From positions 72,823,104 through 72,887,103 of the forward strand of contig NC_068988.1 of NCBI RefSeq assembly GCF_001194135.2: a DNA stretch of 64,000 nucleotides. The letters run 5' to 3'. Position numbers and translations under genes: made by a program. This document shows, one piece after another, positions 11,901 through 53,082 of the stretch. Every line of letters begins with the position of its first letter. Position 1 is the first letter of the stretch. The notes beneath the pieces were generated by a model that was not told the DNA's origin, did not search any database, and saw only the letters and a list, made by a program, of their open reading frames with translations. Source of the DNA: Octopus bimaculoides (lineage: Eukaryota).

Positions 11901-14900
11901 ACTTCAATTTGTATTATTATCTCATTTATTTGGGATAATTTCAGAGCTCTGATGCCTTCCTCAAGGGCACTGGAAATGTAAATTAAGTGACTCAGCTACA
12001 ACCAGGAATCATAACTGAGTCACAGACGCAACTTGTAGAAAGCATACTTGATTCAGACAAAAGTTAACACCTTTTTGAGATGTTAGCCATGAAAGTTCTA
12101 TCACTAAAATCATGGCAACAACAGAAACAAACACTAGGCTGTTAACAATAGCTCTCAAGTTTTCAAACTAACTGAATCAGGTCACCATAAAACAGTGCCA
12201 CTTGAACAAACTATCAATACATAAATCTTCTAACATATACTCTCTGGTAGCAGGAAAACCACCACAAATTCAAATAATAGATATAATCACGTGATCAAGA
12301 TCACGGTCAATGACTGACCAGGCTGTCTGCTGTTGTTACACATCGCTCATCACAATGTGTTTTGCATTGTTTTAGCCTTCAAATGGCTCAATAAGCAGTC
12401 CAACATTCTCCCCCTCCCCCCCACACACACACACTGATCAGAAGGGGGATTGAAGCAACATGAATTGAAGTGCTTTGCTCCAGAACACAATGCACTGCCC
12501 AGTCTGGAAACTGAGCCCACAATCTAGTGATCATGAGTGCAACAGCCTAACTACGAGGCTACATGCCTTCACAATAGATATAATATAATATAATATAATG
12601 AACTTATCGTATCCAGTGCTCAGGTGCACTACAACTCATCAGAAAAAGTAACCAAACATGCATGAACAGTATATAGAATATGCACAGGAAATGAACAGTG
12701 AATTTAAGGCAGCATGCAAGTTTTGAAGGATGTAATGTCTCAACAGCTAACAAATGATGCAGATAGTTTATTCCAAGCTTCAGCAATTCTGAGCCTGAAG
12801 AAATATTTCTAAAAATCATGGTTGTTGTATTGTTTCTTGATCTTGTAAGCATGTCCTTGAGTGTTAGACATAAGGAATTTGGGAAGATGCCTGAGGTTAT
12901 TGTTGGAAAGATGGTGGACAATTTTGTTGGTGTCTACCAACTTAGTTGCCAGATGTCAGAGCTTTAATATGTCCAGAAAAGCAAGATGTTCAGAATATGG
13001 TAGTTGCCTGACAGCCAGAATTCATCTGCTTGCACGTTTCTGAACAGATTCCAGGAAATTGATATGCTGAGCAAGATAGGGGTTCCAGCTTTAAATAGAT
13101 AGCCAGAGAGCAGCTAAAAAAGGTCTTATTGAGTGATGCTATGACACCCTCAGCTTTCTTGATAATTTTAGAAATGTGGTTTGTCCAATGCAAATTGCTG
13201 TTGACAAATAATGCCCAGGTCACATTCACTATCAGACTTCTTAAGATTGGTGTTATTGAAGGAGTATGTAAAAGCTAGATTTTTCCTCCCATTTTTTACA
13301 ATTTTATCATTTCATTTTTTTGCTGAATAGACAATATATTTTACACTATTGAATTATTAATGCTAAAGAGCTTATATTGATGATGATGATTAACAATGAA
13401 GTTGCTAACTATAATGGAGAAGGGAAAAAAGAAATGATGATGCATATGATGATGATGATGATGATGATGATGATGTCAACTAGACAGCATCAAATAAAAT
13501 GTAGCAACAGTATTGTTGTTTATAAATATGGTTACAGCAATATTAAAGATGATTATAATGAACACTATTAAAACAACTACAACAGCAATAACAAAAACAA
13601 TAATAAAAAAATAATGATATTTCTATTTTTAGGCACAAGGCCAGCAATTCTGAGGTAAAGAATTTTGTTAAAATTGATGACCCAAGTACTCCACAGGTAC
13701 TTTATTTTATCAACCCCAAAAAGATGAAAGGCAACATTAATATTTATGAAAATGAAAACCTAATTATAGTAGTGATAAGGTTAAAGATTTTGACCATATG
13801 AGCAATGACAAGCTTGATTGTAACATCCTTAAATAGCAAACTCTAGAAAACAGTAAACTTACAATAGTAGTAGCAATGGAATACTGGCTTGCATAGATGA
13901 AGGCTGACGGAGCAGTAGGGAATGTTCCATAAAGAAAGCCATTCATACTAAGTGAGCTTGTCTCATTTGCATTAGCCCCTGGCTTGACAATATAGATAAC
14001 TTGCCAGGTTACAAGTGGTAACAATAGTCTGAAAAAATAAGATAAAACTGGTTAGAAACAATAAACAATAAACAAACATTTTGTGTTGTACACTCAACAA
14101 GCTTGGCATGAGAATGAATATTGTACCCTACTCACTTTCATCAAAAAGCAAGTAGTTCTGCCAGAACTCACTGTGCTATATGGAAGCAAGACTGAGAAAT
14201 AGGTAGTTTAGCCATCAAATTGAGAAAATCTAGCTTCCAAACCAAAGTTCTTGCTATAGAGGTGGGAAGATGGAGGTTTGTGGACAAATCTGTCTATGAT
14301 CTGGAACAGCTTTCAGTTTCTGGGAGAAATAGAACCTCAACTCTTAAGGAGTAATGAAAGAGGTGAATTTCCAAAGGTATAATTTACCCTTTGTTCAACT
14401 GTGTCTCAGACTAAGTTGGTGACAACATTCAAGGTACCTTGGCTCTGGGGTACTTCAAGCACCCAGGAAGGTGCAGGTTGCAATACAGACAGTAGAAGAG
14501 AACATGGTAGCAGAGGGGTATCCAGGAGTCATGAACTGGATGTGGCTCTACTCCCATATAGTGTAAGGAGTTAAGGGTCAAATGATTTGCATGAGGTTAG
14601 GAGGCTTCTTTGCTGAAGGCCTTCTGCTATTCAGCTTTCCCTAGCATTTTTTACTACCAGAGGGGGTGGTATACTTCAAAAGATTTACATGAGAGGGACA
14701 AATGAGTTATTGCTTGTTTCTTATTATCTCTTATCAATATTTTGATCTCAAAGTACAAATACAAAATAGATGTGGAGATAAATTTCTACATGTATTTCTT
14801 TCAAATTCCAAGAAAAATCTTTCTTTTGGCACATAAATCTATAAAATATATGATAATTATACAGTAAAACTATCGCAGTCAACAACACCTAACCAAGCTG

Positions 14901-17900
14901 AAAATATAAATTACTTATCATTCATCATTGACACTCTGTCAGCTACAATGACAAGGGTTCCAGTTGGTCAAATCAACAGAACAGCCTGCTCATGAAATAA
15001 ACATGCAAGTCACTGAGCATTCCACAGACATGTATCGTTAACAAGTTACTACGAAGATTCAACATGATACAGAATGTGACAAGGCTGATCCTTTGAAATA
15101 CAGGTACTACTCATTTTTGCAAACTGATTGGACTGGAGCAACGTGAAATAAAGTGTCTTACTCAAGGACACAATATGCCATCAGGAATTGAATTCCTGAC
15201 CTTATGATCATGAGCTGAATACCCTAACCACTAAGCCATGAGCCTTCACTATGAGTGACTATACCCAAGTTGAGACAAACTACCACCTGAGTAAATTAGG
15301 AAAGTAACAGTAACAATACTACCCTTAAAGCAAATAGATCCCTCTCCTTGGAATGAAAAAGGTTCTAGGTCTGTTAGAACAAGTAACCACAATGATAAAA
15401 AAACAGTATACATACACATGCACACATACATATACGTTAATAAACATACATTTATATATATTCATATAATGATGGCTGTCAATTCATAGATGAGTATAAG
15501 CATCACTGACATATCCTAGATGCGAAAGACAATGACTGTCAGCAATGTCCGAGGTGAAATTTAAATTCAATAACAGCTTGCACAACACCAATACAACTCT
15601 CACCTACAAAGCCAAATAGTCCAGAAACAAGCAAGAGCAAAATCTCCGGCTTCACAATGAGGTGGATGTTATTTCAGAATTTCCTTCTCCTAGAGTGATC
15701 TCTAAACAAAGACTAGGGATCTCCTACTCCCAGCTATTGGGTGGGCATTGATTCTACTGACTTCATTTGTCCTTTAATAGATTTTGTTTTTCACCCTGCA
15801 GGGTGTCTATCAAAAGTCACCTCCTGTACCAAGCAAGCTTCTTAAGTGACACAAAGTTCAACCCACTCACACACATACATAAACAGCCATAACCTCACAT
15901 GCACACACACATACGTACATACATGTGTTATCATTACACACACACACACACACACAGACCTGTGCGCATGCACATACCCACACATGCCTCCTTTACTTGC
16001 ACTCTCCTGTCTTAGAAAGAACTTTTTCTTCACCCATTCCCTTCCAGTCATTTCAATATGTGACCGGGTGTGTATCGTTGGCGATTTTCTTTCTCCGTCT
16101 TCCCTTGTTTAAACTTTTTCTATATATCTGATGAAGAGATCCACTCAGAACATGAAATCCTCTTTCTTTTCTTTCCTTTCCTGAGCGTCCAATANNNNNN
16201 NNNNNNNNNNNNNNNNNNNNNNNNNNNNNNNNNNNNNNNNNNNNNNNNNNNNNNNNNNNNNNNNNNNNNNNNNNTTTTTATATTATTAATAAATTCATAA
16301 ACTCATCAATAATATACTCAGGAAATCAATATTTAATATTTTGAAAGACATACATCCAACATGACACGGCAACATAATAAATTTAAAATTTAAAATTTAA
16401 AATATAAATATCAATACATATAAAAATCTGAATATAGATAAATATATGTGTGAATATATATGCGTATAAAAATTTATGCGTAATTAAGCATGAATATTGT
16501 AAAGTCTAAAATATAAAATATAAAGGAACCTAAAATTTAAAGAGTTAAATATCTTACGATCGTTTCGCGGATATTACTATAATCACAAAGTGATCTAAAG
16601 ATCATCTTATTATCAGTAATTCCGCTCTTCAGAGATGCATTAAGAACCAATAGTATATATATATAATATTAAAACATTAGAAATACCTCTGTAGTAAGAA
16701 GTTTGCTTCCCAACCACATGGTTTCGAGTTCAGTCCCACTGCATGGCCTCATCAGGTCGACCAAAGTCTTGTGAGAGGATTTGATAAAAAAATGAAAGAA
16801 GCCCATCATATATGTGTGTCTTTGTGTCTATGTGTCATTGTGTCTATGTGTCTTTGTGTCTATGTCCCCACCACCACTTGACAACCAGTGTTGGTGTGCT
16901 TACATCCCTGTAACCTAGCGTTTTGGCAAAAGAGAATGATAGAATAAGTACTAGGCTTTAAAAAATAAGTCTTGATTTGTTTGACCAAAACCTTTCAAGG
17001 GGGTGCTCCACCATGACAGCAACCAAATGACTGCAACAAGTAAAAGATAAAAAAATAAATTCTGTAATTGAAAAGCATAGGAAACTAAAGAAATTTTTGA
17101 TAAAACAAAGGTAGGGTAACTGTCAACACATCTGCTTCTAACCCATTTACCATCAAGCAACCAGTAATCATCATAACACATAAGCCATCAAAATTCACAT
17201 TGATTTTTTTGTTTTTGTTTTTTTGAGTTTCATTTTTTTTTTTTGTAAAATAAGAAATATAGACATACGTTTTAGCAAGAACCAATAAAAATGGAACAAC
17301 TAATTGGATACCAAGCTGATTCTTAGTTTTTCCAACCAAATTCAGACCAAGGTAGAAGAGGGCAGATGCAGCAAATGCATTACCTGGAAAAGAAAAATCA
17401 CATTAAAATACAACAATAAAAAAAAAAGTTAAATAAAGTTTATAATGTTCAGTGATTAAAAATAATTTTGATTTTTGAAATTGTTTAAACATGTATTTCA
17501 TAAGCAAGATAATTATCCTCACAGTATATTTTTATCATAACAATTTATCATAAACAAACAGAAACTATGAGACACACATCTTGTAGAATGACACCAATAC
17601 AGATTCTTGATGATCTACTTGCAGTATTTTGAATAAGTTGCACATTCACATCAAAGAGACACATAACAAGTTACTGCAAAAATAAGGTAAAATTAAAACT
17701 GCTGCTTATAAAATATGGGATTGGTCTTATTTACAAATTATATTTTTTGATTTCAAAGTCTGTGTTTTAGTGACCAAGATTATTCACATCAACCAATACA
17801 AAATGAATGAATTGACTTGGACATTGACTTGGACATTATACTGAATTTTTTCATAAGTTTCAAGATCTCCTTTTAAAGGTGAAGGAAATCAGATAAACAA

Positions 17901-18003
17901 GACTATACATGAATCAAATTTTTCAGCGATGATCATTCGATAGTAGTAGTTGTCAACTGGCTGTCAGCTGGTCAACATGTCTTTGTTTACATCAATTCTC
18001 TCT

Positions 18004-18040
<37 letters not shown>

Positions 18041-18219
18041 AAGTGAGTGATAAGTGACATGTGTTCTTAACCTTCCCCCTCCCTTCCCCCTCTCTTAAGA
18101 ACACATGTCACTTATCTCTCGCTTTCTCTCTCTCTCTCTCTCTCTCTNNNNNNNNNNNNNNNNNNNNNNNNNNNNNNNNNNNNNNNNNNNNNNNNNNNNN
18201 NNNNNNNNNNNNNNNNNNN

Positions 18220-18266
<47 letters not shown>

Positions 18267-21200
18267 GTGATAAGTGACATGTGGTTTTAAGAGAGGGGGA
18301 AGGGAGGGGGAAGGTTAGGGTTAGGAGTCCCTGCAGTCTGCTACCTGCTGGCACGCCCTTTCCATCTTTCTTTATGGAAATTGCCAAATTGATGTAAACA
18401 AAGACATGTTGACCAGCTGACAGCCAGTTGACAATCAGCGAATGATCGCCAATTTTTCTTAACCATCTCTGTTTTTCAGTTTATTTTTTAAATAATTAAG
18501 ATTTTTAAGAGGTTTAGTAAAATATCAGTAACTATATATCTTGGTATATAGTACATTGGTACTATATGACACAATATATAGATTTTGATGGGAAATCAAT
18601 ATGGATAGTCTTAAGTAGCTTAATATTAAAAGTGTTAAGAATATTAGAAGCATAAATGAAGTGTTCAAATGGAGAATGAATGATGGACTCAAAATAAAAT
18701 CATATAAACAGACTACCAAAAATGTTTTTGCACTCATATGCTAATTTGGAAATTGTAGAAACACAATGCAGCACATGAATTAAGATTAAATATAATAAAG
18801 TATTAAAAACATTGTTACTTACCTAACACTGTCAGAATATTTTTTATAATGATGGGAATTGTTTGTTGAAAGATAAAATTGAACATAATTCCCAATATTG
18901 TCATAAATACTATGGGATTTTTGATTACATCCACAAGAATTTTTAAATTTACATAAGGTCGTTTTCTGTTTTCTTGAAAATTATTAGGATTTCGATTTTT
19001 ATGTATTTCCATCATAATGAAACAAATAGGGTTAATCAAAGCTAACGAGATAGGAGCAAACAGGTAGATATATTTAAGATATATTGAATTGTCACCATAT
19101 AAGGCTTTCACTGCAATAAAAAGAAGTAGAAATACAGGTAATAAAATAATTTGATAAAATTAACTGATTAATATATACTTAATAAAAGCTTATATTGTTT
19201 AAAAAAATAAACTCTTCCAATAGGACATGGCATTTTTCTGAAAAGTGAATAATTCAATATGTTAACATTGACCTCTATTTGTAATGGAATACGTTGCATA
19301 ACCACAGACAGATTTTATTTCAGTGTAATTTTAATGTGTTTTCCCATGCTGGCCTACAATGTATCACCACTTTCAATCTTTCATTAATTCATGTGTGATT
19401 CATTATCCCAAGAACTTACTACACAATTTCTCATGTCTTCCTCATCTCAGGCACCTTCAATCATCGGCCTATATCCAATAATCATTATTTTTTTATTCAT
19501 ACTACATTCCTGTACCAGTGCAGTTGTTGTCTCTCTTGTATACATTGGTTTACTTCTGTTCAATTAGGATCTGCTTTTCATCCATATTAATATTATTCAT
19601 CTAACCATTATGCTCCTTGCATTTCTCTCTAGCCTCTACAGATCTTCCACAACCAATACCCAAGCCTCACTACTATGTTGCATCAGGCATCTTAAACATG
19701 CTTCACACTGACTGCCTTTTGCAGAGATAAATTGCCATTTTTTTGCAAATAGAAGTGACAGTTCCCTGAACATCTACAGTTCCTTTCTTATGAGAATTTC
19801 AGACATTGCTATATTAATATTTTAAAAATTAAAAAGTTATTGCTTTGAACTCTGGACTATTCTTCCTGATTTAGGACTTTACTTCCAACTCTGCAACAGA
19901 TTTTGCTATAAGAACCAAGTCATCAGCACATTAAAGTACCCAATGTTGATTAGTCTGGAACTCTTCTGTTAAAGTCTCAAAAACTATAACAAATAGAAAG
20001 GGACCAATGTGAAAGCCTACCAATACACTGTATCTCTTTCTGAACTTGCTGCCAACTTTAATCTTATACATGGCTTGATTGACACTCACAAGCCAATCAT
20101 CTACATCTAGTTCTTTACTGTCCACCAGACTAGTTTTAATAGTCTGGTGGACAGTAATAACCTTTTTTCTATGTATAACTTTAAATGCAGAGTAGCTTCG
20201 TTTTAAATGAAAACTACTCCTGCAATTGCCATCATCAGAAATATGCCATCTATGGCTCTGAATTTTAGTACAAGCACAAATTGCATCATATACAAGTTAA
20301 CCATATTCTGTAATAACTTTGTTATAACTCTCAACTAGTTTAACAATTTGTGTAAAATCTCTGAAAAAATAACCCCAAATATATGAGATCTGAAGGTCAA
20401 AGGCTAATGATAGCTTGGTTAATTGGGATGTAGTTAATAGAATCAACCACAATACATATCGAGTACATATATTTTATCAATTCTTGACAACTAGAAGATA
20501 AAGTTAACTCTTGTAGTAACTGAATAATTCAGCAGCATTTGATAAGGATGCTGAACCTTTCATACAAGATGACAAAGGACCAAGATACTTGATGCCTTGC
20601 TGTACTCAAGAAGACCTGTACTCTACAGCAGAAGTGTTAAGGTCACTCCTCCTGATGAATAGGATTGGCCTGCAAGAATTTTGTGTTGGTGTCATGTAAA
20701 AAGCACTCAGCACACTCTGTGAAGTGGTTGGCATTAGGAAGGGCATCCAGCCATAGAAACCATGCCAAATCAGACTGGAGCCTGGTACAGCTCTTCAGCT
20801 TGCCAACTCTGGTCAAACCATCCAACCCATACCAGCATGGACAATGGACATTAAATGATGATGATGATGATGATATGCTAACAACAATCTCATATAAAAA
20901 TGATTATGACAACAATATATAGTCTCAAACATTTTCTGCTGCTGGAGCTGTTAGTTTTCTATCCATTGTTTTTCATGCACCAAAGTTAGGCCTAGAGCTA
21001 TCTCGCTGTTTTTTTTCCAGTTACTATTCCTTCATCGTCATCATCATCATCATCATCATCATTGTTGTTTAATATCTGCTTTCCATGCTGGCATGGGTTT
21101 GATGGTTTGACTGAGGGCTGGTGAAACCTGATGGCTACACCAGGCTCCAATCTGATCTGGCAAAGTTTCTACAGCTGGATGCCCTTCCTAATACCAACCA

Positions 21201-22685
21201 CTCCGAGAGTGTAGTGGGTACTTTTTACATGCCACCAGCATGATGATGACACCTTCTCAAAGTCATATATATATGTACCATGCTTAAAGTACATATTATA
21301 GGAATTCAGTCTTCTTGGAGAATATAGAGAAAAGAATCAAATATATTAATAAAAATAAAATAGAAATATTGCCCAATTAACACAGCTCCTTGGATCCTGA
21401 GTGCCTTTATCAGAGACCACTGTTTTGCAAATATTTGATCAGATAACACATCTGAGGATAACTCAATATTTTGATGTATTGCTTTCTAATGTAGTGACCC
21501 TTGAGTCAGTGTTTCTTCCTCCCCTCTCTAATTCTAGTAGAGATTTAGCTATAAGAACAAGGTCATCAACGTAGAGGAGCTCCTAAAGGTTACCAGTCTT
21601 AAATTTGTCTACTACGGCCTGGAGGACTGATAAACATGAGGAGACTGAGGAGTGATCATTGGTGAACACTAAATTCATTGCTATACTCATTGCCAATTTT
21701 CACCTTATTGACAGCATCCCTGTACATGACTTGTACAGCTGTCACCAGCTTCTTCTCAATCCCTAGCTTCTGCACTGACCACCAGATAAGGGAGTAGACC
21801 CTGTCAAAGGCTTTCTCCATGTCAACGAAATCCAAGTAGGGGGGTTTATTTTTAGCTACATGCTTCTCCTGCAGTTGCCTTACTAGGAAGATAGCATCAA
21901 TAGTACTTCTCCCTGGCATAAAACCAAACTACATTTCGTCTAGGCTCTCTTTCAAATTAGTTAAGCTACGACCCTCTCTGTAACTTTCATGACCCAGTCC
22001 AGCAGTTTGATACCTCTGTAGTTATTTCTGTCTAAGGTGTCACCTTTGTAGCACTTGACTAAAATGCTGCTACACCAGTAGTTGGATGTAACTCCATTGT
22101 GGACAACTTGATTAACTATACGAGTAACTTGGTCACAAAATATATGGTAGCGTTTCAAATTAAAATAAAAAATAAGTCAAATAAAAACCTTCGAATTTTA
22201 TTTGTCATATGAGTGAGGCAATTATGCTTAAAATACTCACTTTATTACTAAGCTAGAAATAGCTGATGCAAATAATTATTAAAATATACTGTATACTTAC
22301 ATATTGGATAGCCAAGGGCAAAATCATTGCTACATGTAGTAAAAATACCAAAAATACCAGCATAACCAAAGTTGATTGGACGGTAGGTAATAAAAGTAAC
22401 TAATATGACCAAAGTGAAGATGATGAGTTTAGAGACTAAGACACACAAAATGAATTTGTAGTTAACTTCTTCCCAGTGGAGTTCCCACATTCCTTGCATG
22501 ACCATCGCTGGTAAGCAGAAATTCCATACAAAAATTCCAATGCTTTTTCCAGTTTTGAAAGTAATTATTTTTGTCCATCCAGCCCAATAACCAGCAAAGA
22601 TAACAGCAAAACATTGTACAATAGCAGGATATAAATTGTTTATGGAACAGTCTCCTGGGTTGGGTACAATTGTAGAGTTGTTCAT
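2693..22685 (-). CDS. GPR155: GPR155/LYCHOS orthologue (PIN-like transporter domain + GPCR-like domain), 10 coding exons in window, 3' part outside window
   Basis: Spliced translation MNNSTIVPNPGDCSINNLYPAIVQCFAVIFAGY...NDFALGYPI|LKALYG...YGTFPTAPSAFIYASQY...SAPLMFISARM...KKVPHLFT...QISKHIILLLCLLFSMCI follows the human GPR155 motif order (recalled: NDFALGYPI, TFPTAP, SAPIMYVSA, QLTRHVLL). All 10 exons have AG/GT ends and consistent phases; total 1995 nt. Confidence 0.93.
3122..4338 (-). mobile_element. 5'-truncated RTE-clade LINE with 15-bp target-site duplication
   Basis: RT peptides SYGIKQGCIFTPVLFNLFF, FRYLGITIS...IYKAVVVSTLFYGCQTW, LKAQLCWIGHVIRM; AGATCCCTAATTACT at 3107-3121 and 4339-4353. 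Confidence 0.85.
5690..6050 (+). repeat. Solo RTE 3' tail
   Basis: Same tail motif plus short repeated gtgtcatgtaaaa units. Confidence 0.75.
6595..6850 (-). CDS. GPR155: GPR155 coding exon 9
   Basis: tttttatag|ATT GTG ... ACA A|gtaagt; TM segment IVIKFVILLISITITSAALII then a polar loop; 256 nt. Confidence 0.88.
7127..7220 (-). CDS. GPR155: GPR155 coding exon 8
   Basis: gtgttag|G CTT CCA ... ATT CAG|gtatgc; GLPVFLTGILFLISWKYYSVSIDPTLQYGLIQ; 94 nt. Confidence 0.9.
7480..8750 (-). mobile_element. Degenerate Penelope-like element (RT thumb/linker region)
   Basis: Minus-strand peptide VFDIILKSFEIRTTYIKTDITNIYHYQPCPPFH (~8590-8700) resembles the PLE FLD...YRKPT...YLHxxSxHP motif; decayed hammerhead-like core at ~7494-7545. 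Confidence 0.5.
9112..9320 (-). CDS. GPR155: GPR155 coding exon 7
   Basis: ttattacag|ATA TTT ... TTT GG|gtaagt; IFRAIGLICC...SSNSWTCLLSI...FSLIGFG; 209 nt. Confidence 0.9.
9716..9799 (-). CDS. GPR155: GPR155 coding exon 6 (different frame from ORF-track 9699..9890)
   Basis: ttcgttaaag|GTT TGG ... TCA CAG|gtaatg; VWICVIFVITRRWKKVPHLFTLCLAISQ; 84 nt. Confidence 0.9.
10230..11130 (+). mobile_element. Mariner transposase relic
   Basis: Frameshifted peptides CLNCTQCHKWHQCFK, LLTDEQQENCV, GEKTWVY, WMLHNN, PKLKS in mariner order. Confidence 0.75.
11230..11385 (-). CDS. GPR155: GPR155 coding exon 5 (absent from ORF track)
   Basis: cctttacag|ACT GCA AGT ... TTT TGT|gtaagt; TASGLVLCTIFSAPLMFISARMMTF...TTFDISTLSLVFC; 156 nt. 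Confidence 0.92.
12650..13260 (-). mobile_element. CR1/L2-type LINE RT C-terminal fragment
   Basis: LFVNSNLHWTNHISKIIKKAEGVIASLNKTF. Confidence 0.55.
13625..13745 (-). mobile_element. SINE family B, 3' fragment
   Basis: taggcacaaggcc...caaccccaaaaagatgaaaggcaa. Confidence 0.6.
13863..14028 (-). CDS. GPR155: GPR155 coding exon 4
   Basis: ttttttcag|A CTA TTG ... ACT ATT|gtaagt; LLLPLVTW...FLYGTFPTAPSAFIYASQYSIATTI; 166 nt. Confidence 0.92.
14230..14690 (-). mobile_element. Degenerate LINE 3' fragment
   Basis: Weak similarity to the CR1/L2 C-terminal SFxPRTxxLWNSLP region. Confidence 0.35.
14930..15250 (-). mobile_element. tRNA-derived SINE family C
   Basis: Minus head GTGAAGGCTCATGGCTTAGTGGTTAGG...GGAATTCAATTCC; fragments also at ~12290-12570 and ~29900-30200. 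Confidence 0.7.
16275..16680 (-). mobile_element. Hammerhead-bearing AT-rich insertion (pLTR/retrozyme-like), truncated by an N-gap
   Basis: Very AT-rich, keeps CpGs, contains the 16551-16636 hammerhead; no ORF. Confidence 0.45.
16551..16636 (-). ncRNA. Minimal type-I hammerhead ribozyme motif with long stem II
   Basis: Minus strand: ATCT-CTGAAGA-GCGGA...TCCGC-GAAAC-GATC-GTA-AGAT. Stem I ATCT/AGAT, stem II GCGGA/TCCGC extended, palindromic GATC loop, GUA cleavage triplet. Confidence 0.8.
16685..17050 (+). mobile_element. tRNA-derived SINE family A
   Basis: gcttcccaaccacatggtttcgagttcagtcccac (B-box) and the family 3' tail. Confidence 0.8.
17269..17383 (-). CDS. GPR155: GPR155 coding exon 3
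   Basis: ttttccag|GT AAT GCA ... AAA AC|gtatgt; GNAFAASALFYLGLNLVGK...LVLAKT; 115 nt. Confidence 0.92.
17925..18450. mobile_element. Foldback/MITE-like element with nested inverted repeats
   Basis: Perfect 48-bp inverted repeat 17950-17997 / 18387-18434, inner hairpin ~18040-18130, (GA)n/(TC)n tracts, N-gap in the middle. Confidence 0.65.
18823..19110 (-). CDS. GPR155: GPR155 coding exon 2
   Basis: ttattgcag|TG AAA GCC ... TTA G|gtaagt; KALYGDNSIYLKYIYLFAPISLALINPICF...KNPIVFMTILG; 288 nt. Confidence 0.92.
19620..20140 (-). mobile_element. Degenerate RTE LINE RT fragment
   Basis: DWLVSVNQAMYK...VLVGFHIGPFLFVIV, homologous to 43260-43440. Confidence 0.7.
20670..20875 (+). repeat. Solo RTE 3' tail
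   Basis: Same tail motif, (GAT)n end. Confidence 0.75.
21035..21245 (-). repeat. Solo RTE 3' tail
   Basis: (CAT)n then the reverse tail; tail-to-tail with 20670-20875. Confidence 0.75.
21560..22150 (-). mobile_element. RTE LINE RT fragment
   Basis: PGRSTIDAIFLVRQLQEKH...DMEKAFDRV; NYRGIKLLDWVMKVTERV. Confidence 0.88.
22301..22685 (-). CDS. GPR155: GPR155 coding exon 1 (ATG at 22685)
   Basis: Minus strand ttttccag|cataATG (acceptor AG 22691-22690, so an upstream UTR exon is implied); ends ATA T|GTAAGT; 128 codons + 1 nt. Confidence 0.9.
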
Positions 22686-27449: not shown

Positions 27450-29300
27450 AATTAAACTGAGAAAATAAATGACCATAATGTAATGGCTGAAACCAGTGTA
27501 GGAACAATGACATTGTTGGGAGAAAGAACAAGGGAAATGTGGTTAGTGTGAGACCCAGAGGGTGGCATATTATGCATGGTGAGAGAAGGAGCAATAAGTG
27601 AGATAGATGGGTTAATTCAATGTGACACAAGATCAGCCAAGTCTGAGGAACAAAGGCTATTGTAATAGTGATAAAAGGGGTAAAGTGAGAAAACAATGTC
27701 TGTAGGCCTGAGGCTGTGTATGCTGGTGTATATATATACGAGGCTTCTTTCAGTTTCCATGTACCAAATTCACTCACAAGACTTTGATCAGCCTAAGAGT
27801 ATAGAAGAAAATACTTGTCCAAGTGCCATGCAGTGGGACTGATCCCAAAACTATGTGGTTGGGAAGTAAGCTTCTTGACTATACAACCGAGGCCAGGAGG
27901 AAGGGGCTGTGACTATGTCCTTCCCAGACTCTCTAAGATCAGTTAGATCAACATGGTTGATGGGCCTTTTGAGCAACTGCAAGGAGATAGCTGTAGGATA
28001 AAAGGGTAAAGAGGGAATTTAAGAAGAATAACATTGTGGAGAGAAAGAACAAGGGAAATGTGTATGCATGATGAGAGAAGGAGCAATAAGTGAGCCAGAT
28101 GGGTTAATTAAATGTGACACAAGATCAGCCAAGTGTGAGGAACAAAGGCTATTGTAATAGTGATAAAAGGGGTAAAGTGAGACAACAATATGTCTGTAGG
28201 CCTGAGGTTGTGTATACTGGTGAGTGACTTCATGCCATACCATTAAGACTTTGTTTAGATGCAGTCTGCTACTATATTTGTATTATGTTTAGTAGCACTG
28301 TGTCCACTGGTATTTGATACCATCCTGAGATCATCGATATTGGTGTTGTTACTGTTCTACTTGAACAATTACAAGCTGGTGGCTGCACAAAAAACATGGG
28401 CAAAGAAGGAATTCCTGACTGACATTCTGGAAAGGAATGACTGGATGTAGTACATAGTATAGAATGACATGAATAATGAAGAAGACAGGAGTACCTGAGT
28501 GGAAGTGATCCAAGTCAACCAGTTCTGAGGATCAGAGGCCATTGTAATAACAGGAAAAGAAAAGGCAGAGACAAGAGACAGCATGTCTGTAGGCCACATG
28601 ACTTCATACCTATCAATTTAGCCATCTTTCTTTGGTGAAGTCTAGGATATATGTGTGTTGCAGCAGCACCGTTCCATCAATGGAATCAATACTCAATCAT
28701 GGGAGTCACCTGAGCCTTATAGAGGATTACTAGTTGTTGAGGGATGAAGTATTTTCTGACTGTGAAGAAGAAGGTCACTATTGAATAATTGGCAGAGTAG
28801 GAAGAGTTGTCATTTTCGGTAATGGGAAAGATTCTAGCATGATTCTGAAGATTGGGATACACCATTGGGATGAAGGAGAGAGGAGGAGAGAGAGAAGAGA
28901 GAAGGATGTTTAGCAAAGATGGGGACTAGCTCTAGAACGCACTGTTTAAGGAAGGAACCTTGTATTGGCCAGCGGGCTTGATGGTTTCAAGTGTTCAGAG
29001 GTGCTTTCATACTTAATAGTGAGCTTAATGGAGTGAAGAGGGATAGTTTTGGATAACTTTTACCAAATCTGTACATTGTGGGATTGAATGCAAAGCAGGT
29101 AGCAAATATGGAGGTTTTCTCCATGGAGGTACTAGTTACAGAAGCATTTATTGTTGAGAAATAGAAAGAAGGATATTCTGCAAAATTCGTACTTAAATAA
29201 GAGAACAAAATGACCAGCTGCAATATGGGAAACAGGAGAGCTTGTGGGCCATGGATGCTAGAAAGCAATCTCTGCATTTCAGAGGATGGTCTTCCAGGAA
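27450..29300 (-). mobile_element. CR1/L2-type LINE fragments with internal duplication and a SINE insertion
   Basis: QQLVILYKAQVTPMIEY; VSLYPFYHYYNSLCSSHLADLV present at ~27510-27715 and ~28040-28210. Confidence 0.65.
27735..27890 (-). mobile_element. SINE family A, 5' half
   Basis: Reverse of the family head. Confidence 0.75.
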
Positions 29301-29859: not shown

Positions 29860-30599
29860 TACAATAAGTGCATTATACAACATTAGTAGGTGCAGTGCAT
29901 TTGAATAGTTTAGAAGCTAGCTTCACAACCATGGGGTCCCAGATTCAATCTTGAACAGACTGCCACTTTCTATAGTCTCAGTCTGACTCATACCTTATGA
30001 GTAAAATTGGGTAAATGGAATAGAAGCCCATCAGGATTGTACCTGTGACATAAAAGTACAGCCTTGTCATACACTGTATCACACTGATTCAGTTTGAGAA
30101 TTATATTAAGGGTACAGTGTCCATAGAATACTCAGCCATTTATATGTTAATACAGGATTAGATAATTCAACTTATCAAACAACTGAATCCTCATCAAGTG
30201 ACAGAGATCCCTCACCACCACTGTATATATATATATATATATATATGAACCCATAATGTGTGTGTGTGTGTGCATAGAGGTAATAAGGTAGATAAACACA
30301 GTTAGGCTGGAGACATATTTACATGGAACACAAGATACAGATTATAAAATAATGAAAAAAATATATATTGAAAAAATTATGTAATGCCCTATCTCAACAG
30401 CTGTTTCAAGAAACCAAACTTACATAACCATATTTATAAGTGACATGTGCATAATGTCATAGGTGTGTGACCAACAAGTTCAGATAAAATTGTTAAAGTA
30501 AGTTAGGCCTCCCTTTTCAAAAAAAAAATGGCAAATGCAATCTTCTAGTAGTCTTTACAAGCATAAAGTTTTAAAGAAAAGAGGAAGGAATAGGAGTTG

Positions 30600-33624: not shown

Positions 33625-34110
33625 ATATAGGCATAGGCGTGGCATGTGTGAGAAAGAAATTGGCTTAGAAGGTGCAAATCCAAGTCCAATTCAGAATGTA
33701 CGAAGCATTTTCGTTGCCCCCATCCCAAAAAAGTTTAGGTGATCTGCTTGCACCCCCTGTACCCTCATTTTTGAGCCTATGTGGGATTCAGCCCCACTGT
33801 ATGCCACCTTGAGAAAATATCTGGATGTGGTAGATGAAAACAGGAAGATGCCAGCCGTAATTGTGTGTGTGTTTGTGCATATATTTCTGTGCATGTGTGT
33901 GTGCGTCTGGGCGTATGTATGTGTGTGTGTTGGACACCACTTGGCAACAGCTGTTGGTTTGTTTACATCCCCATAACTTATCAGTTCAGCAAAAAGCAGC
34001 TGATAGAATAGGTAGCTGGCTTTCTGTAACAAATAAGTACTGAGGTCTATTCATTCAATTAAAACCTTTCAAGGTGGTGCCCCATCACAAGCATAGTCTA
34101 ATGACTGAAT
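33625..34110 (+). mobile_element. SINE family A composite copy
   Basis: Head-like ataggcgtggc and 3' part gtttacatccccataactta...gtctaatgactgaatc. Confidence 0.6.
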
Positions 34111-34218
34111 CAACTGAATCAAGATATATATATATATATATATAGGTAAGTGGTAGGTTTGCCTCGATCCTTCAGGAGTAGTCTGAAGCACACCACAAAC
34201 TTCGAATATACCCTTCAA

Positions 34219-34270
34219 CACTCTGAAGAGATCGGCCAAACTACTGGCTGCATCGAAACGTACGTAAGTG
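34219..34270 (+). ncRNA. Minimal type-I hammerhead ribozyme motif
   Basis: CACT-CTGAAGA-GATCGGCCA aactac TGGCTGcATC-GAAAC-GTAC-GTA-AGTG; stem I CACT/AGTG, 9-bp stem II with one bulge. Confidence 0.82.
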
Positions 34271-40245: not shown

Positions 40246-40333
40246 GCAGCTGAGGAGTACATTTTCATTGTACATTCTATGTGGTGTTCTCACTACATGA
40301 ATAAATGGAGCTTGTACGAAACGTACGTACTGC
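40246..40333 (+). ncRNA. Minimal type-I hammerhead ribozyme motif with long stem II
   Basis: GCAG-CTGAGGA-GTACA...TGTAC-GAAAC-GTAC-GTA-CTGC; inner hairpin ATGTGGTG ttct CACTACAT. Confidence 0.8.
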
Positions 40334-42039: not shown

Positions 42040-42610
42040 TGTTGCCATTTTATATTTTTAATTTCGTGCATGCACATTGTTTTTGATTTTGTTGACTACA
42101 CAGTATAGTACAGTCAGTTGGACACCATCTGTGAGAAAAACAGCACTCTGACACAATTCACTCTGCCAGAATTTTGGAAACGACATGTTATACTGCTTGG
42201 CATTCGTGCTGGAAGCTCCAATACAAACAAATGGTGAACCCATAGAACAACTGTTGGCTTGCCATGTCCTCAAAACATGTGCCAAGAGTGATAAAAATCA
42301 AACATCCAGTCAAAATCATGATGTTTGGAGTGATCACTAGTGAAGGTGCTATTATGCCTCCATTCAGCTTCCCACACGGCCTCAGACTCAACATGGAAAC
42401 CTATATCAAGTGCCTGAAGGAGGTAGTGCTGCCCTGGGTCAAGAGGGTGGCTGCTGGAAAACCCTATTTCTGGCAACAGGACTCTGCACCATGCCACACA
42501 AGCAGGAGAACCCAGTCATGGCTCTCAGACAATTTCTGTGATCACATCACCCCTAACATCTGGCCACCTAACTCCCCACACTGCAACCCTCTTAATTATT
42601 TCTTCAGATC
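42040..42610 (+). mobile_element. maT (DD37D-type) Tc1/mariner transposase fragment
   Basis: HPVKIMMFGVITSEG...WQQDSAPCHTS...WPPNSPHCNPLNY; 37 residues between the QQD aspartate and the PL(D>N)Y position. Confidence 0.8.
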
Positions 42611-43039
42611 TGCTACTACCTACCTACCACGCCTTCACAAAAACAAAAGAGAGAGAGACAGAAAAAAGGAAAATGTCCCACTTATTTGAAAACAATGAAA
42701 ATATTTTAAAAAAACATTTCATTTCATTTTTCCACAATTTAATCACTTTCATGTTTTATTCTAAGTTGAAAAAGTCGCAAAGACTGAAACCAGTACTAAA
42801 ATGTTCTTCACGATAAAATTATTTTAGCATTTTCTACCTTGTCCTATTTCCCTTATGTGTGTGTGTGTGTGACTCATATGAGGAGTCACAACGTGAAGTG
42901 GATGAATTGTAAACATTAGTGAATGGTAGTAATAGTAGTGTGGGTAGTGTGAGTATGTTATTGATTGTCTATTTGGTTGGATTTTTATTTTCCTGTCTTC
43001 TCACTAAACACTCATACATCATCTTCAATAGGAGAGTCT

Positions 43040-45002
43040 GTCATATAGTAAGGGAGAGAGTCAGTTCAGATGAGATGCAGTTTGGGTTTGTGCCAGGGAA
43101 AAGCACCACTGATGCTATATTTCTGGTAAGACAGCTGCAAGAGAAATACCTAGCCAAAGATAAACCTCTGTTCCTGGCTTTCGTTGACATGGAGAAAGCC
43201 TTTGACAGGGTCCCCCGATCCCTTATCTGGTGGTCAATGAGGAAACTAAGGGTAGATGAATGGTTAGTGAGAGCTGTGTGAGCCATGTACAGGGATGCTG
43301 TCAGTAAGTTGAAAGTTGGCAACAAGTATAGTGAAGAATTCAGTGTAGGGGTAGGGGTCCACCAAGGATCAGTCCTCAGCCCCCTCTTATTCATCATAGT
43401 CCTCCAGGCAATAACAGAAGAATTCAAGACAGGATGCCCCTGGGAGCTCCTCTATGCTGATGACCTTGCTCTAATTGCTGAGTCACTATCAGAACTAGAG
43501 GAAAAGTTTCAGGTGTGGAAGCAAGGATTAGAATCGAAGGGCCTTAGAGTCAACCTAACTAAAACCAAAGTTTTAATAAGTAGGAAGGCAGACAAACCAC
43601 AAATCCCTGATCAATCTGTAGAAAAGGCGTAGGTAGAAACGCCATAAAATGTACCCAGTGTAAGCTATGGACACAGGTGCAGCAATATCAAAGGAAGGCT
43701 AACTGGGAAGACAGTTTTTGTATGTGGCAAATGCTCAGGTTCTATAAACACTGAAAATGTGCAAAGAACAGCTTCTGTCACATTCCAGGGAGAAAAACTA
43801 GAAGTAGTTGATAGCTTCCATTACCTAGGGAACCAAGTTAGTAGCAGAGGTGGATGCTCTGAAAGGGTAACTGCTAGAATAAGAATAGCCTGGGGAAAGT
43901 TCAGAGAGCTACAACCTCTGCTAGTGACAAAGGGTCTCTTGCCCAGAGTAAAAGGTAGACTGTATGATGCATGTATATGAACAGCCATGCTACATGGCAG
44001 TGAAACATGGACTGTGACTGTTGAAGACATGCATAAGCTTGCAAGGAATGAAGCCAGTATGCTCCACTGGATGTGTAATGTCAGTGAGCATACATGACAG
44101 AGTGTAAGCGCCCCGGGAGAAAAGTTAGATTTAAGAAGCATCAGATGTGGTGTGCAAGAGAGACGACTGCGCTGATATGGTCATGTGTTGCGAATGAATG
44201 AGGACAGCTGTGTGAAAAATTGCCATACCCTAGCAGTTGAGGGAACCTGTGGAAGAGGTAGACCCAGGAAAACCTGGTATGAGGTGGTGAAGCATGACCT
44301 TTGAACATTGGGCCTTACTGAGGCAATGACTAGTGACCAAAACCTTTGGAGTTATGCTGTGCTTGAGAAGACCTGACAAGCCAAGTGAGACCATAGCCTG
44401 TGGCCTATGCCAGTGGGTGTAACCAGCCCATTTATGAATATCCCTCATTCATTAGACAATAAACTTTGCTTGCGAAGACCTATTGAGGCAAGTGAAATCA
44501 AAATCAAAATCGCTGTCATGGCCGATGACAGTACCGTCTGATTAGCACTCGTGCTAATGGAACATTAAAAGCACATCCGAGCGTGATCATTGCCAGGGCC
44601 ACGGATTGGCTCCCATGCCGGTGACACATGAAAAGCACCATTCAAGCATGATCATTGCCAGCATCGCCTTACTGGCACATGTGCCGGTGGCACGTGAAAA
44701 ACAACATTTGAGCATGGTCGTTGCCAGTGCCACCAGACTGGCTCCTGTGCAGGTAGCACATAAAAACATCTTTTGAGCATGGTCATTGCCAGAACCACCT
44801 GACTGGCCTTCGTGCCAGTGTCACGTAAAAGCACCCACTACACTCTTGGAGTGGTTGGCATTAGGAAGGGCATCCAGCTGTAGAAACTTTGCCGGATCAG
44901 ATTGAGCCTGGTGCAGCCTCTGGCTCACCAGTCCTCAGTCAAACCGTCCAACCCATGCCAGCATGGAAAGCAGACATTAAATGATGATGATGATGATGAT
45001 GA

Positions 45003-45005: not shown

Positions 45006-45034
<29 letters not shown>

Positions 45035-45036
<2 letters not shown>

Positions 45037-45470
45037 CTTTTCTTTTATCTTTTACTTGTTTCAGTCATTTGACTGTAACCATGTTAGGGCACCATCTTGA
45101 AGGGTTTTAGTCAAACAAATCAACCCCAGGACTTTATTTTTTTAAGCCTAGTACTTATTCTATTTGTTTCTTTTGCTGAACTGCTAAGTTACAGGGTCGT
45201 AAACATACCGACACCAGTTTCCAGGCGGTAGTGAGGGACAAACACAGACACAAAGACACACATAGGTAGGTGCATACATACGTACATACGTACATACATA
45301 CATACATACATACATATGTACAATGGACTTCTTTCAGTTTCCGTTTACCAAATCCACTCACAAGGCTTTAATTGGCCTGAGGCTATAGTAGAAGACACTT
45401 ACCTGAGGTGCCACACAGTAGGACTTAACCTGGAGCCATGTGGTTGGGAAGCAAACTTCTTACCACACAC
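45035..45470 (-). mobile_element. SINE family A
   Basis: Both halves in reverse, with internal (TACA)n. Confidence 0.8.
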
Positions 45471-46729
45471 ACACACACACACACATATACAGACATATTC
45501 CAGTATTGGAATAAAAACAAAATGGCGTTAAATTATAATTCAATTTGTGCTACTCAATAACAAGTGGCACAGCTGCACAGTATCAGTTCATATTGATGCC
45601 CATAAAGACAGATAAATGATACTATATAAATGATACATAGAAATAGATTTTTTTTACCACCACCCATGAATGCAGACACACAAATACCTGAATGCACACT
45701 CACACACAAACACACACATGCTCTCTCTCTCTCTCTCTCTCTCTTTCTTTCTCTCTCTCTCTTTCTCTCTTTTTCTTTCTCTCTCCCTCTCTCTCTCTCT
45801 CTCTCTTTCCCTCTTCTCCTATACATTCCCACTCACATCCATACAACTTCATAAATATTGAACCTAAAACAAAAAGACAGATGTGAAGCTAAACCTGGAG
45901 TAGAGAAAGCATGTCACTGCAAGGTCATGAATAGTAATGAAAAGACTTTGGTAAACTGATGAACTAATTAACTAAATGATTAATCAAACAATGAATTATT
46001 TCCTTGATTAAGTAGCTAACCAATTGACAAATAAGTAAGAACTGAAATTGAACTATGTATCTTTTACTTTGAATCATAGCTCAATCTGTGATTATATCCT
46101 TTAATTCATTATTTTGAGCAATGGTTGGCAAGTTTGCTTTGGCAATGCTGAAGATATTTTGGTGACACGGATTGTGTGTCACTATAAATGGTATGACCTG
46201 TTCTTGTTTTCCTCATTTGTGTGTTGTCCTAAGTTGTTGTATAAGTATTTCTATAGCATACTGTATATCATTTTCTATAAGTAGAGACAGATGTTTTGTT
46301 TGAGCAGAAATTCTTAGAGTTCTGTCAGGGGTTTGTCTCTGGTATTCACATCTTCCACGAAGGTACAAATTTTTCTGGCTAGGCAGTATGAGATATTGTG
46401 TTTGTATGTGTTGGATGGCAGAATTTAAAATTCAGGTATTGATGCACACCTGTGTGTTTATAGTATATATCAGTGATGATGGTGGTGTCACTTTTAATTA
46501 CCATTAATTACTATTTTAATTACCATTTTAACTACCAGAAACAGTTGTTGGATTTATAACACCTTTCATTCACTCCTCTAATTTTCTGTCATTTGTACTC
46601 TGTGTACGTTGGTCCTATTAATATAAATATCTATATATTTATGTTTAAAAATTCATCATCTGCAAGTTTCCACCTTCTGCTTTCTCTTGTTTTGCATGTA
46701 TATTTATATACATATTTTGTATTCTTTTA

Positions 46730-47080
46730 TTCTTTTAGTCTTTCACTTGTTTCAGTCATTTGACTGAGGCCATACTGGAGCATCGCCTTAAAGTGTTTTA
46801 GTTGAAGAAATCGACCCCAGGACTTATTCTTTATAAGCTTATGTGCCAAATTCAGTTGTCAAGCGATGGTGGGTGGACAAACACACACACACATAAATAT
46901 ATACAGATATATACATATCACAGGATTCTTTCAGTTTCCTTCTGCCAAATCCTTTCACAAGGCTTTGGTCAGCCCGAGGTTATAGTAGAAGATACTTGGC
47001 CAAGGTGCCACACAGTGGGACTGAACCTGGAACCATGTGTTTGGGAAGCAAGCTTCTTACCATACAATCATACCTGCACC
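46730..47080 (-). mobile_element. SINE family A
   Basis: Both halves in reverse. Confidence 0.8.
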
Positions 47081-47528: not shown

Positions 47529-47920
47529 GGCGCAGGAGTGGCTATGTGGTAAGCTAGGTGCAAGGATGGCTGTGTGGTAAGAAGCTCGCTTCCCAACCAC
47601 ATGACTCCAGGTTCAGTCCCACTGCATGGCACCTTGGACAAGTGTCCTCTACTATAGCCTCAGGCCGACCAAAGCCTTGTGAGTGGATTTGATAGATGGA
47701 AACTGAAAGAAGCCTGTCATATATATATCTTTCCGTCAACTGCTTAAAACTCCCACTTCTCTCCTTTTGCATTCTTATGCAGCCAACCCTGATTGGATGG
47801 AGTATGCCATAACAATTGTGCAATGCCGCGGCACCACAAATACCTTTCTTGACTCACTGCAATCTCTTCAAGGTAATGCCCCAGCATGGTCACAATCTAT
47901 TGACTGAAACAGGTAAAAAA
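47529..47920 (+). mobile_element. SINE family A
   Basis: GGCGCAGGAGTGGCTATGTGG (A-box-like) and GGTTCAGTCCC (B-box-like). Confidence 0.8.
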
Positions 47921-53075: not shown

Positions 53076-53082
53076 TGCTGTG

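What the first reader, a model, noticed from the sequence alone, without database searches (positions are those of the whole stretch)
16551..16636. Sense-oriented hammerhead inside GPR155 intron 3
Seen: the motif is on the same strand as GPR155, between coding exons 3 and 4. Predicted cleavage is after GUA, between 16555 and 16554. Stem II extends as GCGGA/UCCGC, AUUACU/AGUAAU, AUAAU/AUUAU and UGAUC-uuua-GAUCA. CpGs are kept, suggesting a young insertion. Inference: cleavage would cut nascent pre-mRNA. As a lone minimal copy with a 4-bp stem I it may be slow unless it dimerises in trans with other family transcripts, giving a possible trans-regulated cut.
Basis: partly seen in the sequence, partly recalled or inferred. 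Interest (0 to 1): 0.72.

Follow-up and report, generated by a model that had tools for sequence, protein, structure and literature searches.

The report
Solo retroelement-type minimal hammerhead in GPR155 intron
The motif is a real, complete minimal hammerhead ribozyme lying in the sense direction inside an intron of the GPR155/LYCHOS gene, but it is the ordinary kind that Penelope-like retroelements scatter by the thousands through animal genomes, and a single copy like this one is expected to cut poorly or not at all.

Summary
On the minus strand, 16636→16551 reads AUCU-CUGAAGA-[60-nt stem II]-GAAA-C-GAUC-G-UA|AGAU, with cleavage predicted between 16555 and 16554. It lies in the sense direction, 713 nt into the intron between GPR155/LYCHOS coding exons 3 (17383-17269) and 4 (14028-13863). 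Exon 3 is on the same gap-free 1873-bp contig, so scaffolding does not decide the orientation.

It is not chance. The window holds three such motifs, with a 4-bp stem I, a G10.1-C11.1 pair and a perfect 8-nt palindrome ACG(AU/UA)CGU. A strict descriptor found none in 300 shuffles.

The architecture matches the minimal, dimer-dependent hammerheads of Penelope-like elements and animal retrozymes. HH1 sits at the 5' edge of a roughly 0.6-kb block that keeps its CpGs (o/e about 1.5, against about 0.2 around it). The block spans an assembly gap and starts just after a (TA)n tract, which suggests a young retroelement fragment.

Folding favours stem II only. The active monomer fold is 2.8 kcal/mol worse than the best fold. 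A homodimer could form helix III, but the other two window copies cannot partner it. No Rfam model matches, and I found no copies outside the window.

Published tests report single minimal copies as inactive, and slow intronic ribozymes as not disturbing splicing. It is a new member of a known kind, and a regulatory role is unsupported.

The parts
16551..16636 (-). Complete minimal type-I hammerhead motif (HH1)
   Evidence: Read directly. Found by descriptor scans. 0 of 300 shuffles give a strict hit.
16633..16636 (-). Stem I, 5' strand AUCU
   Evidence: Pairs with AGAU at 16554-16551. The next pair out is C/A, so the stem is 4 bp.
16626..16632 (-). Core box CUGAAGA (C3-A9)
16566..16625 (-). 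Stem II, a 60-nt imperfect hairpin of 21 bp closed by G10.1-C11.1, with UUUA end loop
   Evidence: It is the only helix that persists in every context fold.
16562..16565 (-). Core box GAAA (G12 A13 A14 A15.1)
16555..16562 (-). Helix III and cleavage triplet. The perfect palindrome ACGAUCGU occupies 16562-16555, so it shares A15.1 with the GAAA box. GUA is 16557-16555. The predicted cut is between 16555 and 16554.
   Evidence: This is the only ACGATCGT in the window. It forms an 8-bp intermolecular helix in the predicted homodimer.
16551..16554 (-). Stem I, 3' strand AGAU
16065..16652 (-). Inferred young insertion carrying HH1 at its 5' edge. It is a CpG-undepleted block that spans the N gap, and its boundaries are approximate.
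   Evidence: 13 CpGs at 16065-16623. CpG o/e is 1.47, against 0-0.28 in the flanking intron, SINE and exon. P=3e-8, or 4e-5 without the hammerhead. No other copy of the block in the window.
16653..16664 (.). (TA)6 tract just upstream of HH1, a possible insertion target
   Evidence: Craig et al. report insertion bias toward microsatellites, with (TA)n for Naiad-clade elements (PMC8557442).
16195..16274 (.). Assembly gap (80 N) inside the inferred insertion, 277 nt downstream of HH1
   Evidence: All three hammerheads lie within 277 nt of a gap (P=5e-4).
16690..17061 (-). Old SINE copy immediately upstream (unrelated neighbour)
   Evidence: 66-88% identical to at least 7 other copies in the window. 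Homology ends at 16687-16694. CpG o/e 0.20.
17269..17383 (-). GPR155/LYCHOS coding exon 3, on the same contig as HH1
   Evidence: Aligns to human residues 249-289 (E=9e-5). cag|G acceptor and AC|gtatgt donor.
13863..14028 (-). GPR155/LYCHOS coding exon 4
   Evidence: Aligns to human residues 290-346. ttcag|A acceptor and G|gtaagt donor; phase is continuous with exon 3.
14029..17268 (-). Intron that hosts HH1. The cut site is 713 nt from the donor and about 2.5 kb from the acceptor.
34219..34270 (+). Sibling minimal hammerhead HH2: CACU-CUGAAGA-stem II-GAAAC-GUAC-GUA|AGUG
40246..40333 (+). Sibling minimal hammerhead HH3: GCAG-CUGAGGA-long stem II-GAAAC-GUAC-GUA|CUGC

Best explanation
HH1 is the hammerhead of a recently inserted, non-coding fragment of a hammerhead-bearing retroelement. 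The fragment is most likely a 5'-truncated or non-autonomous derivative of a Penelope-like element, that is, a solo pLTR or retrozyme-type monomer. It landed next to a (TA)n tract in the intron between GPR155/LYCHOS coding exons 3 and 4, in the sense direction.

In its element of origin, this kind of ribozyme has almost no helix III of its own. It becomes active only when two copies pair through the palindrome ACGAUCGU to build a double hammerhead, or when the element's protein assists. That arrangement suits processing of tandem or multimeric element transcripts.

As a single copy in a host intron, only stem II folds stably. Self-cleavage of GPR155 pre-mRNA is therefore expected to be rare and without consequence. 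The motif is a passenger, not a host regulatory device.

Shown here: the motif, its non-randomness, the gene context, the CpG block and the folding energetics. Inferred: retroelement origin, youth and low activity.
For: 1. Emergent shared architecture. Three window copies share features the descriptor did not impose: G10.1-C11.1, exactly 4-bp stem I, H17=A, and a perfect 8-nt palindrome ACG(AU/UA)CGU. Their stem II sequences and flanks are unrelated. [quoted passage not shown]
2. Short helix I (4-5 bp), a large helix II and a small palindromic helix III are the published traits of PLE min-HHRs and their fly, rotifer, shrimp and mosquito variants.
3. A CpG-undepleted block of about 0.6 kb surrounds and follows HH1, in a region with CpG o/e of about 0.2.
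4. All three hammerheads lie within 277 nt of an assembly gap (P=5e-4). PLE insertions are reported to break short-read assemblies (PMC8557442).
5. (TA)n tracts lie directly upstream of HH1 and HH2, and one lies downstream of HH3. PLEs show insertion bias for microsatellites, with (TA)n reported for the Naiad clade.
6. Folding: the best monomer fold has stem II only, and the active fold costs +2.8 kcal/mol. The homodimer gains -11.8 kcal/mol through an 8-bp helix III.
7. Published behaviour of the class: single min-HHRs are inactive and dimers weak. The Anolis PLE hammerhead needs its protein and leaves no RNA-seq read ends in vivo.
8. Intronic copies are commonplace: about 43% of Xenopus retrozyme copies overlap introns.
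Against: No reverse transcriptase or GIY-YIG coding sequence adjoins HH1. The 276 nt downstream is AT-rich and full of stops, so the link to a PLE rests on ribozyme architecture alone.

No second copy of this subfamily was found anywhere. There is none in the window, none in the metagenome pattern scan and none by peptide look-ups, so I have no family alignment or covariation.

The unpaired nucleotide between A9 and G10.1, reported as typical of PLE min-HHRs, is absent. No Rfam hammerhead model scores the motif.

CpG retention could also reflect a locally unmethylated patch rather than youth. The gap could hide a second copy, which would change the activity prediction.
Confidence: 0.72

Rival explanations
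1. HH1 is not alone. It is the first unit of a tandem (retrozyme-like) array or a fuller Penelope-like element that is collapsed into the N gap at 16195-16274. A second identical hammerhead would then be transcribed in the same intron. The two would form a double hammerhead in cis, and the GPR155 pre-mRNA (or an element transcript) would be cut appreciably, perhaps releasing a small circular RNA.
For: The CpG-rich block continues on both sides of the gap. All three hammerheads abut gaps (P=5e-4). PLE and tandem structures are known to break short-read assemblies. The homodimer is strongly favoured in silico (ddG -11.8 kcal/mol).
Against: The gap is sized at only 80 N, while other gaps in the window range from 52 to 764 N, which suggests sizes were estimated. 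Eighty bases is too short for another monomer plus hammerhead. The sequences on the two sides of the gap share no similarity with each other or with the hammerhead's upstream flank, so no repeat periodicity is visible. Even dimeric min-HHRs cleaved poorly in vitro.
Confidence: 0.15
2. The sense-strand hammerhead is a working cis-element of GPR155/LYCHOS. It cleaves the nascent intron and lowers mature mRNA output. Its activity is gated by trans factors, either same-subfamily transcripts that dimerise with it or a Penelope-like element protein.
For: Sense orientation on the same contig as exon 3. Intact core and intact CpGs. There are precedents for sense intronic ribozymes affecting host mRNA (Cpeb3, PMC10919898) and for protein-assisted PLE hammerhead cleavage (PMC11167929).
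Against: There is no conservation or expression evidence. The monomer fold is unfavourable and lacks recognisable loop-loop tertiary contacts. The window's other copies are incompatible partners. Bimolecular pairing with a rare trans transcript, in the minute or so before the 3' splice site is made, is kinetically implausible (inference). Slow ribozymes in introns do not affect splicing. Its youth argues for a passenger rather than a selected function.
Confidence: 0.05
3. The motif is a chance match to a permissive hammerhead descriptor in AT-rich sequence.
For: The relaxed descriptor does hit shuffled sequence at 0.37 per window. No Rfam model supports the motif.
Against: No strict hits occur in 300 shuffles, against 3 observed. 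The three copies share unimposed features, including the 8-nt CpG-rich palindrome, in a window with CpG o/e of 0.25. They are also non-randomly close to gaps.
Confidence: 0.02

Closest known systems
Minimal hammerheads (min-HHRs) of metazoan Penelope-like elements (Cervera & de la Pena 2014, PMC4209133)
   Same: Type-I topology, canonical core, G10.1-C11.1, 4-bp helix I without a defined loop 1, and an enlarged helix II. Helix III is reduced to a small palindrome that implies dimeric action. Most copies are solo, dispersed and highly variable within one genome. There is an association with microsatellites and with assembly breaks.
   Different: Helix II is far longer here (21 bp over 60 nt, against 6-8 bp). 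The unpaired nucleotide between A9 and G10.1 is absent. No pLTR/ORF context is visible. Helix III keeps 2 bp plus a tetraloop, as in the fly, rotifer, shrimp and mosquito variants, rather than being absent.
Type-I hammerheads of animal non-LTR retrozymes and satellites (newt satellite 2, Schistosoma Sm-alpha, mussel and axolotl retrozymes; PMC7229834; preprint 10.64898/2026.07.22.740005)
   Same: Helix III of 1-2 bp capped by a palindromic tetraloop, dimer-dependent cleavage, non-coding AT-rich carrier sequence of a few hundred bases, and frequent intronic copies.
   Different: Those have a 6-bp helix I and 4-bp helix II with loop-loop tertiary contacts, and they sit in head-to-tail tandem repeats of 170-400 bp. 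Here there is no visible tandem, a 4-bp helix I and a very long helix II.
Conserved intronic sense ribozymes of vertebrates (HH9/HH10 hammerheads; the CPEB3 HDV-like ribozyme, PMC10919898)
   Same: A self-cleaving motif on the sense strand of an intron of a protein-coding gene, with cleavage in principle competing with splicing.
   Different: Those are single-copy, deeply conserved, stably folded as monomers and experimentally active. HH1 is a young repeat-derived copy with an unstable monomer fold and no conservation evidence.

Membership tests
Hammerhead ribozyme (general definition) | Conserved core C3 U4 G5 A6 N7 G8 A9 ... G12 A13 A14 ... with H17 not G | tested here: met
   CUGAAGA, GAAA and GUA read directly. 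Found by the descriptor scan.
Hammerhead ribozyme (general definition) | Three helices around the core, with G10.1-C11.1 and A15.1-U16.1 closing pairs | tested here: met
   Stem I is 4 bp, stem II is 21 bp closed by G-C, and stem III has A-U and C-G pairs plus a GAUC loop. Stems I and III are not in the best predicted fold.
Hammerhead ribozyme (general definition) | Site-specific self-cleavage giving 2',3'-cyclic phosphate and 5'-OH ends | not testable with these tools
   Needs in vitro transcription and cleavage, or RNA-end sequencing.
Rfam hammerhead families (all curated hammerhead models in Rfam 15) | Covariance-model score at or above gathering threshold | tested here: not met
   No hammerhead hit at gathering score over the whole window. 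None at E<=10 on 2.2-kb and 191-nt slices around HH1 and HH2. This is expected for minimal variants, which the original authors found with RNAmotif descriptors rather than with these models.
PLE-type minimal hammerhead (Cervera & de la Pena 2014) | [quoted passage not shown] | tested here: met
   4 bp in all three window copies.
PLE-type minimal hammerhead (Cervera & de la Pena 2014) | Helix II larger than the canonical 4 bp | tested here: met
   21 bp over 60 nt, much larger than the published 6-8 bp.
PLE-type minimal hammerhead (Cervera & de la Pena 2014) | Palindromic positions 15.2-16.2 and loop 3, implying a dimeric helix III | tested here: met
   ACGAUCGU is a perfect palindrome. The predicted homodimer forms the 8-bp helix with ddG of -11.8 kcal/mol.
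PLE-type minimal hammerhead (Cervera & de la Pena 2014) | Unpaired nucleotide between A9 and G10.1 | tested here: not met
   A9 is followed directly by G10.1 in HH1, HH2 and HH3.
PLE-type minimal hammerhead (Cervera & de la Pena 2014) | Belongs to a within-genome consensus family with covariation | tested here: inconclusive
   Three copies share the architecture, and their stem I and II sequences differ while still pairing. No second copy of the HH1 subfamily was found. The genome itself is not searchable here.
Penelope-like element (as the carrier) | pLTR-ORF-pLTR structure with RT and GIY-YIG endonuclease | tested here: not met
   There is no long ORF next to HH1. The RT fragments in the window match Pfam RVT_1, lie far from any hammerhead and look LINE-like from their motifs (my reading). 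Only a truncated or non-autonomous fragment remains possible.
Animal non-LTR retrozyme | Head-to-tail tandem repeats of 170-400 bp, each with a type-I hammerhead | tested here: inconclusive
   No tandem period appears around HH1. The insertion does run into an 80-N gap.

The most novel reading that the evidence does not exclude
The sense-strand copy could make GPR155/LYCHOS pre-mRNA conditionally cleavable. The hammerhead would stay silent as a monomer. It would be switched on when same-subfamily element transcripts or the Penelope-like element's own protein are present (protein-assisted cleavage, as shown for the Anolis element). Output of a lysosomal cholesterol-sensing gene would then be coupled to retroelement activity.
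Probability: 0.04. Interest if true: 0.6.

Novelty: new member of a known kind. Interest (0 to 1): 0.22.

Why it matters
If the ordinary reading is right, the value lies mainly in annotation. It documents Penelope/retrozyme-type minimal hammerheads in this CpG-depleted invertebrate genome, three distinct subfamilies within 64 kb. It also shows that they mark young insertions and assembly gaps, and that Rfam models miss them entirely. A sense intronic copy would matter biologically only if it cleaves. It would then be a natural case of a host gene made sensitive to retroelement activity. Present evidence makes that unlikely.

Tried and rejected
- Rfam scans over the whole window at gathering score, and over slices at E<=10, found no hammerhead family.
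- An exact or up-to-3-mismatch search for further HH1 copies in the window found only HH1 itself.
- BLAST of the HH1, HH2 and HH3 blocks, and of the left side of the gap, against the window found no shared flanks and no tandem or inverted partner.
- A metagenome pattern scan for the HH1 subfamily gave 0 hits.
- I used the 37-aa and 43-aa reading frames across the hammerhead as handles to find repeat copies in public assemblies. The exact look-up found nothing on record and the homology search found no candidates.
- I considered that the hammerhead belongs to the adjacent SINE and rejected it. SINE homology ends at 16687-16694 in every copy. Other copies carry no hammerhead. HH2 sits on the opposite side and strand of its neighbouring SINE piece.
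- I considered heterodimers with HH2 or HH3 and rejected them.
- I considered that the scaffold orientation of the 1.9-kb contig could fake the 'sense' call and rejected it, because exon 3 lies on the same contig.
- I left the third large protein search unused. The idea was to look for the orthologous intron in the relative that is 83% identical at the DNA level (L001). That relative's only recovered contig (L001) is 1.4 kb, so I judged the chance of reaching the site to be about 5%.
Full report
**Observation**

On the minus strand the window reads, from 16636 to 16551: AUCU CUGAAGA GCGGA-AUUACU-G-AUAAU-AAGA-UGAUC-UUUA-GAUCA-CUUUGUG-AUUAU-AGUAAU-A-UCCGC GAAA C-GAUC-G UA AGAU. Stem I is 4 bp.

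RNAfold prefers a slightly different middle register (-20.2 kcal/mol). Helix III is only A-U and C-G around a GAUC loop, and the eight bases ACGAUCGU form a perfect palindrome.

**Is it chance?**

A descriptor scan of both strands finds three motifs: HH1 (minus, 16636-16551), HH2 (plus, 34219-34270) and HH3 (plus, 40246-40333). In 300 dinucleotide-preserving shuffles, the relaxed descriptor hits 0.37 times per window, and reaches three hits in 2 of 300 shuffles. A strict descriptor never hits. It requires a palindromic helix III of 10 nt or less, a stem I of at least 4 bp, and G10.1-C11.1.

The three copies also share features the scan did not impose: stem I of exactly 4 bp, H17=A, and the palindrome ACG(AU/UA)CGU. 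The motif is real. No Rfam hammerhead model scores any copy, at gathering score or at E<=10 on short slices. These are therefore minimal variants outside the curated models.

**Gene context**

Minus-strand reading frames align to human GPR155/LYCHOS in the PDB sequence set:

| Window coordinates | Human residues |
|---|---|
| about 22.8-22.25 kb | 33-155 |
| 19110-18823 | about 160-255 |
| 17383-17269 | 249-289 |
| 14028-13863 | 290-346 |

The first block also hits Pfam Mem_trans. Splice sites (cag|G...AC|gtatgt and ttcag|A...G|gtaagt) and reading phase agree.

HH1 therefore lies in the sense direction in the intron between coding exons 3 and 4, 713 nt from the donor and about 2.5 kb from the acceptor. 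The window has nine N gaps, and HH1 sits on a 1873-bp contig bounded by two of them. Exon 3 is on that same contig, so the sense orientation does not depend on scaffolding.

**What carries it**

The window is strongly CpG-depleted (o/e 0.25, against GpC 1.02). Between 16065 and 16623 there are 13 CpGs (o/e 1.47). The flanking intron, the adjacent SINE and exon 3 have o/e values of 0-0.28. At the background rate the excess has Poisson P=3e-8, or 4e-5 when the hammerhead itself is left out.

This block spans the 80-N gap at 16195-16274 and begins just after a (TA)6 tract at 16664-16653. That tract follows the 3' end of an old SINE copy at 17061-16690. I read the block as a young insertion of about 0.6 kb with the hammerhead near its 5' end.

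The block has no long ORF and no other copy in the window. All three hammerheads lie 115-277 nt from an assembly gap (P=5e-4). HH1 and HH2 each have a (TA)n tract upstream. HH3 has one about 145 nt downstream.

**Comparison with the literature**

Cervera and de la Pena (PMC4209133) described minimal type-I hammerheads in the flanking repeats of Penelope-like elements, scattered by the thousands through metazoan genomes. Their traits are:
- a short helix I (4-5 bp) and an enlarged helix II;
- a conserved G10.1-C11.1 pair;
- an absent or small, palindromic helix III, implying dimeric action;
- extreme sequence variability within a genome;
- mostly solo copies.

Variants with a small palindromic helix III occur in flies, rotifers, shrimps and mosquitoes. 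Craig et al. (PMC8557442) report that PLE insertions break short-read assemblies and show insertion bias toward microsatellites, with (TA)n reported for Naiads. They also report PLE remnants in cephalopods. A 2026 preprint argues that animal retrozymes are non-autonomous PLE derivatives, and finds about 43% of Xenopus copies in introns.

HH1 fits this class in all but two respects. It lacks the unpaired base between A9 and G10.1, and its helix II is unusually long. HH3 also has a long helix II.

**How it probably behaves**

The best monomer fold contains stem II only. The full hammerhead fold is 2.8 kcal/mol worse. With 30-100 nt of flank, the CUGAAGA box pairs with neighbouring sequence instead.

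Two HH1 copies are predicted to pair through an 8-bp intermolecular helix III (ddG -11.8 kcal/mol). HH2 and HH3 cannot partner HH1, because neither the palindrome nor stem I matches. ACGATCGT occurs nowhere else in the window.

Published tests of this class point the same way:
- Single min-HHRs showed no detectable cleavage, and dimers only weak cleavage.
- The Anolis Poseidon hammerhead cleaved only with its element's protein, and no RNA-seq reads ended at its site.
- Synthetic intronic ribozymes disturb splicing only when fast (Fong et al. 2009, as summarised in PMC10919898).

My best explanation, at confidence 0.72, is a young, non-autonomous or truncated retroelement fragment whose hammerhead is a passenger in the GPR155 intron.

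**Rivals**

- The gap may hide a second copy, which would allow cis-dimer cleavage (0.15). The CpG block crossing the gap and the gap association favour this. The 80-N gap size and the lack of any repeat period argue against it.
- Chance (0.02) is excluded by the shuffles.

**Limits**

I found no external copies. The metagenome pattern scan gave nothing, and using the frame across the hammerhead as a peptide handle gave nothing. The only relative found is a 1.4-kb contig covering exon 1, 83% identical at the DNA level, which does not reach this intron.

There is therefore no family alignment, no covariation test and no orthologous-site test. The organism is not identified by any tool result. 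The repeat content and the closest hits suggest a mollusc, possibly an octopus. That is my inference only.

**Verdict**

HH1 is a new member of a known, abundant kind, and the interest is low to modest.

Noticed in passing
window 34219-34270 (+) and 40246-40333 (+): Two further minimal type-I hammerheads with a GAAAC-GUAC-GUA palindrome and 4-bp stem I lie upstream of GPR155, 154 and 115 nt from N gaps. Their flanks are unrelated to each other and to HH1. HH2 and HH3 could pair with each other through helix III, but their stems I do not match.
   Followed up: partly
window 30392-30524 (-): Possible U3-A8 core-variant hammerhead: UUUU-UUGAAAA-[8-bp stem II with G.U pairs]-GAAA-CAGCUG-UU|GAGA. 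The palindrome ACAGCUGU could be a CpG-decayed ACGGCCGU. The AT-rich core makes chance plausible.
   Followed up: no
window 53059-54420 (+): A single uninterrupted 453-aa ORF matches Dynactin_p62 (Pfam E=2e-28). This intronless copy of a normally multi-exon gene could be a retrogene.
   Followed up: partly
window 54590-54700: A CpG-rich patch contains the palindrome GTACGTACGTA, with GUGAAGA about 70 nt upstream. It resembles a hammerhead but lacks a valid core (C3 replaced, no GAAA).
   Followed up: no
window 16690-17061, 45034-45467, 57499-57869, 47570-47724, 46726-47060, 27734-27881, 1594-1913, 33935-34144: An abundant old SINE-like family has at least 8 copies, 66-88% alike. Its conserved 3' part reads GLNLEPCGWEA when translated. 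Several copies end in microsatellites.
   Followed up: partly
window 42919-43632 (+), 21656-21919 (-), 42264-42689 (+): LINE-type reverse transcriptase fragments match Pfam RVT_1, one of them inside GPR155 intron 1. There is also a weak, below-cutoff match to the DDE_3 transposase family (E=3.5e-4). None lies next to a hammerhead.
   Followed up: partly
window 17950-18147 and 18238-18434: An inverted repeat (80% over 202 nt, rich in (AG)n/(TC)n) is centred on the N gap at 18148-18219. It could be a palindromic structure or an assembly artefact.
   Followed up: no
whole window: CpG o/e is 0.25 while GpC o/e is 1.02, which indicates strong historical CpG depletion. Local CpG-rich patches therefore stand out as candidate young insertions.
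   Followed up: partly
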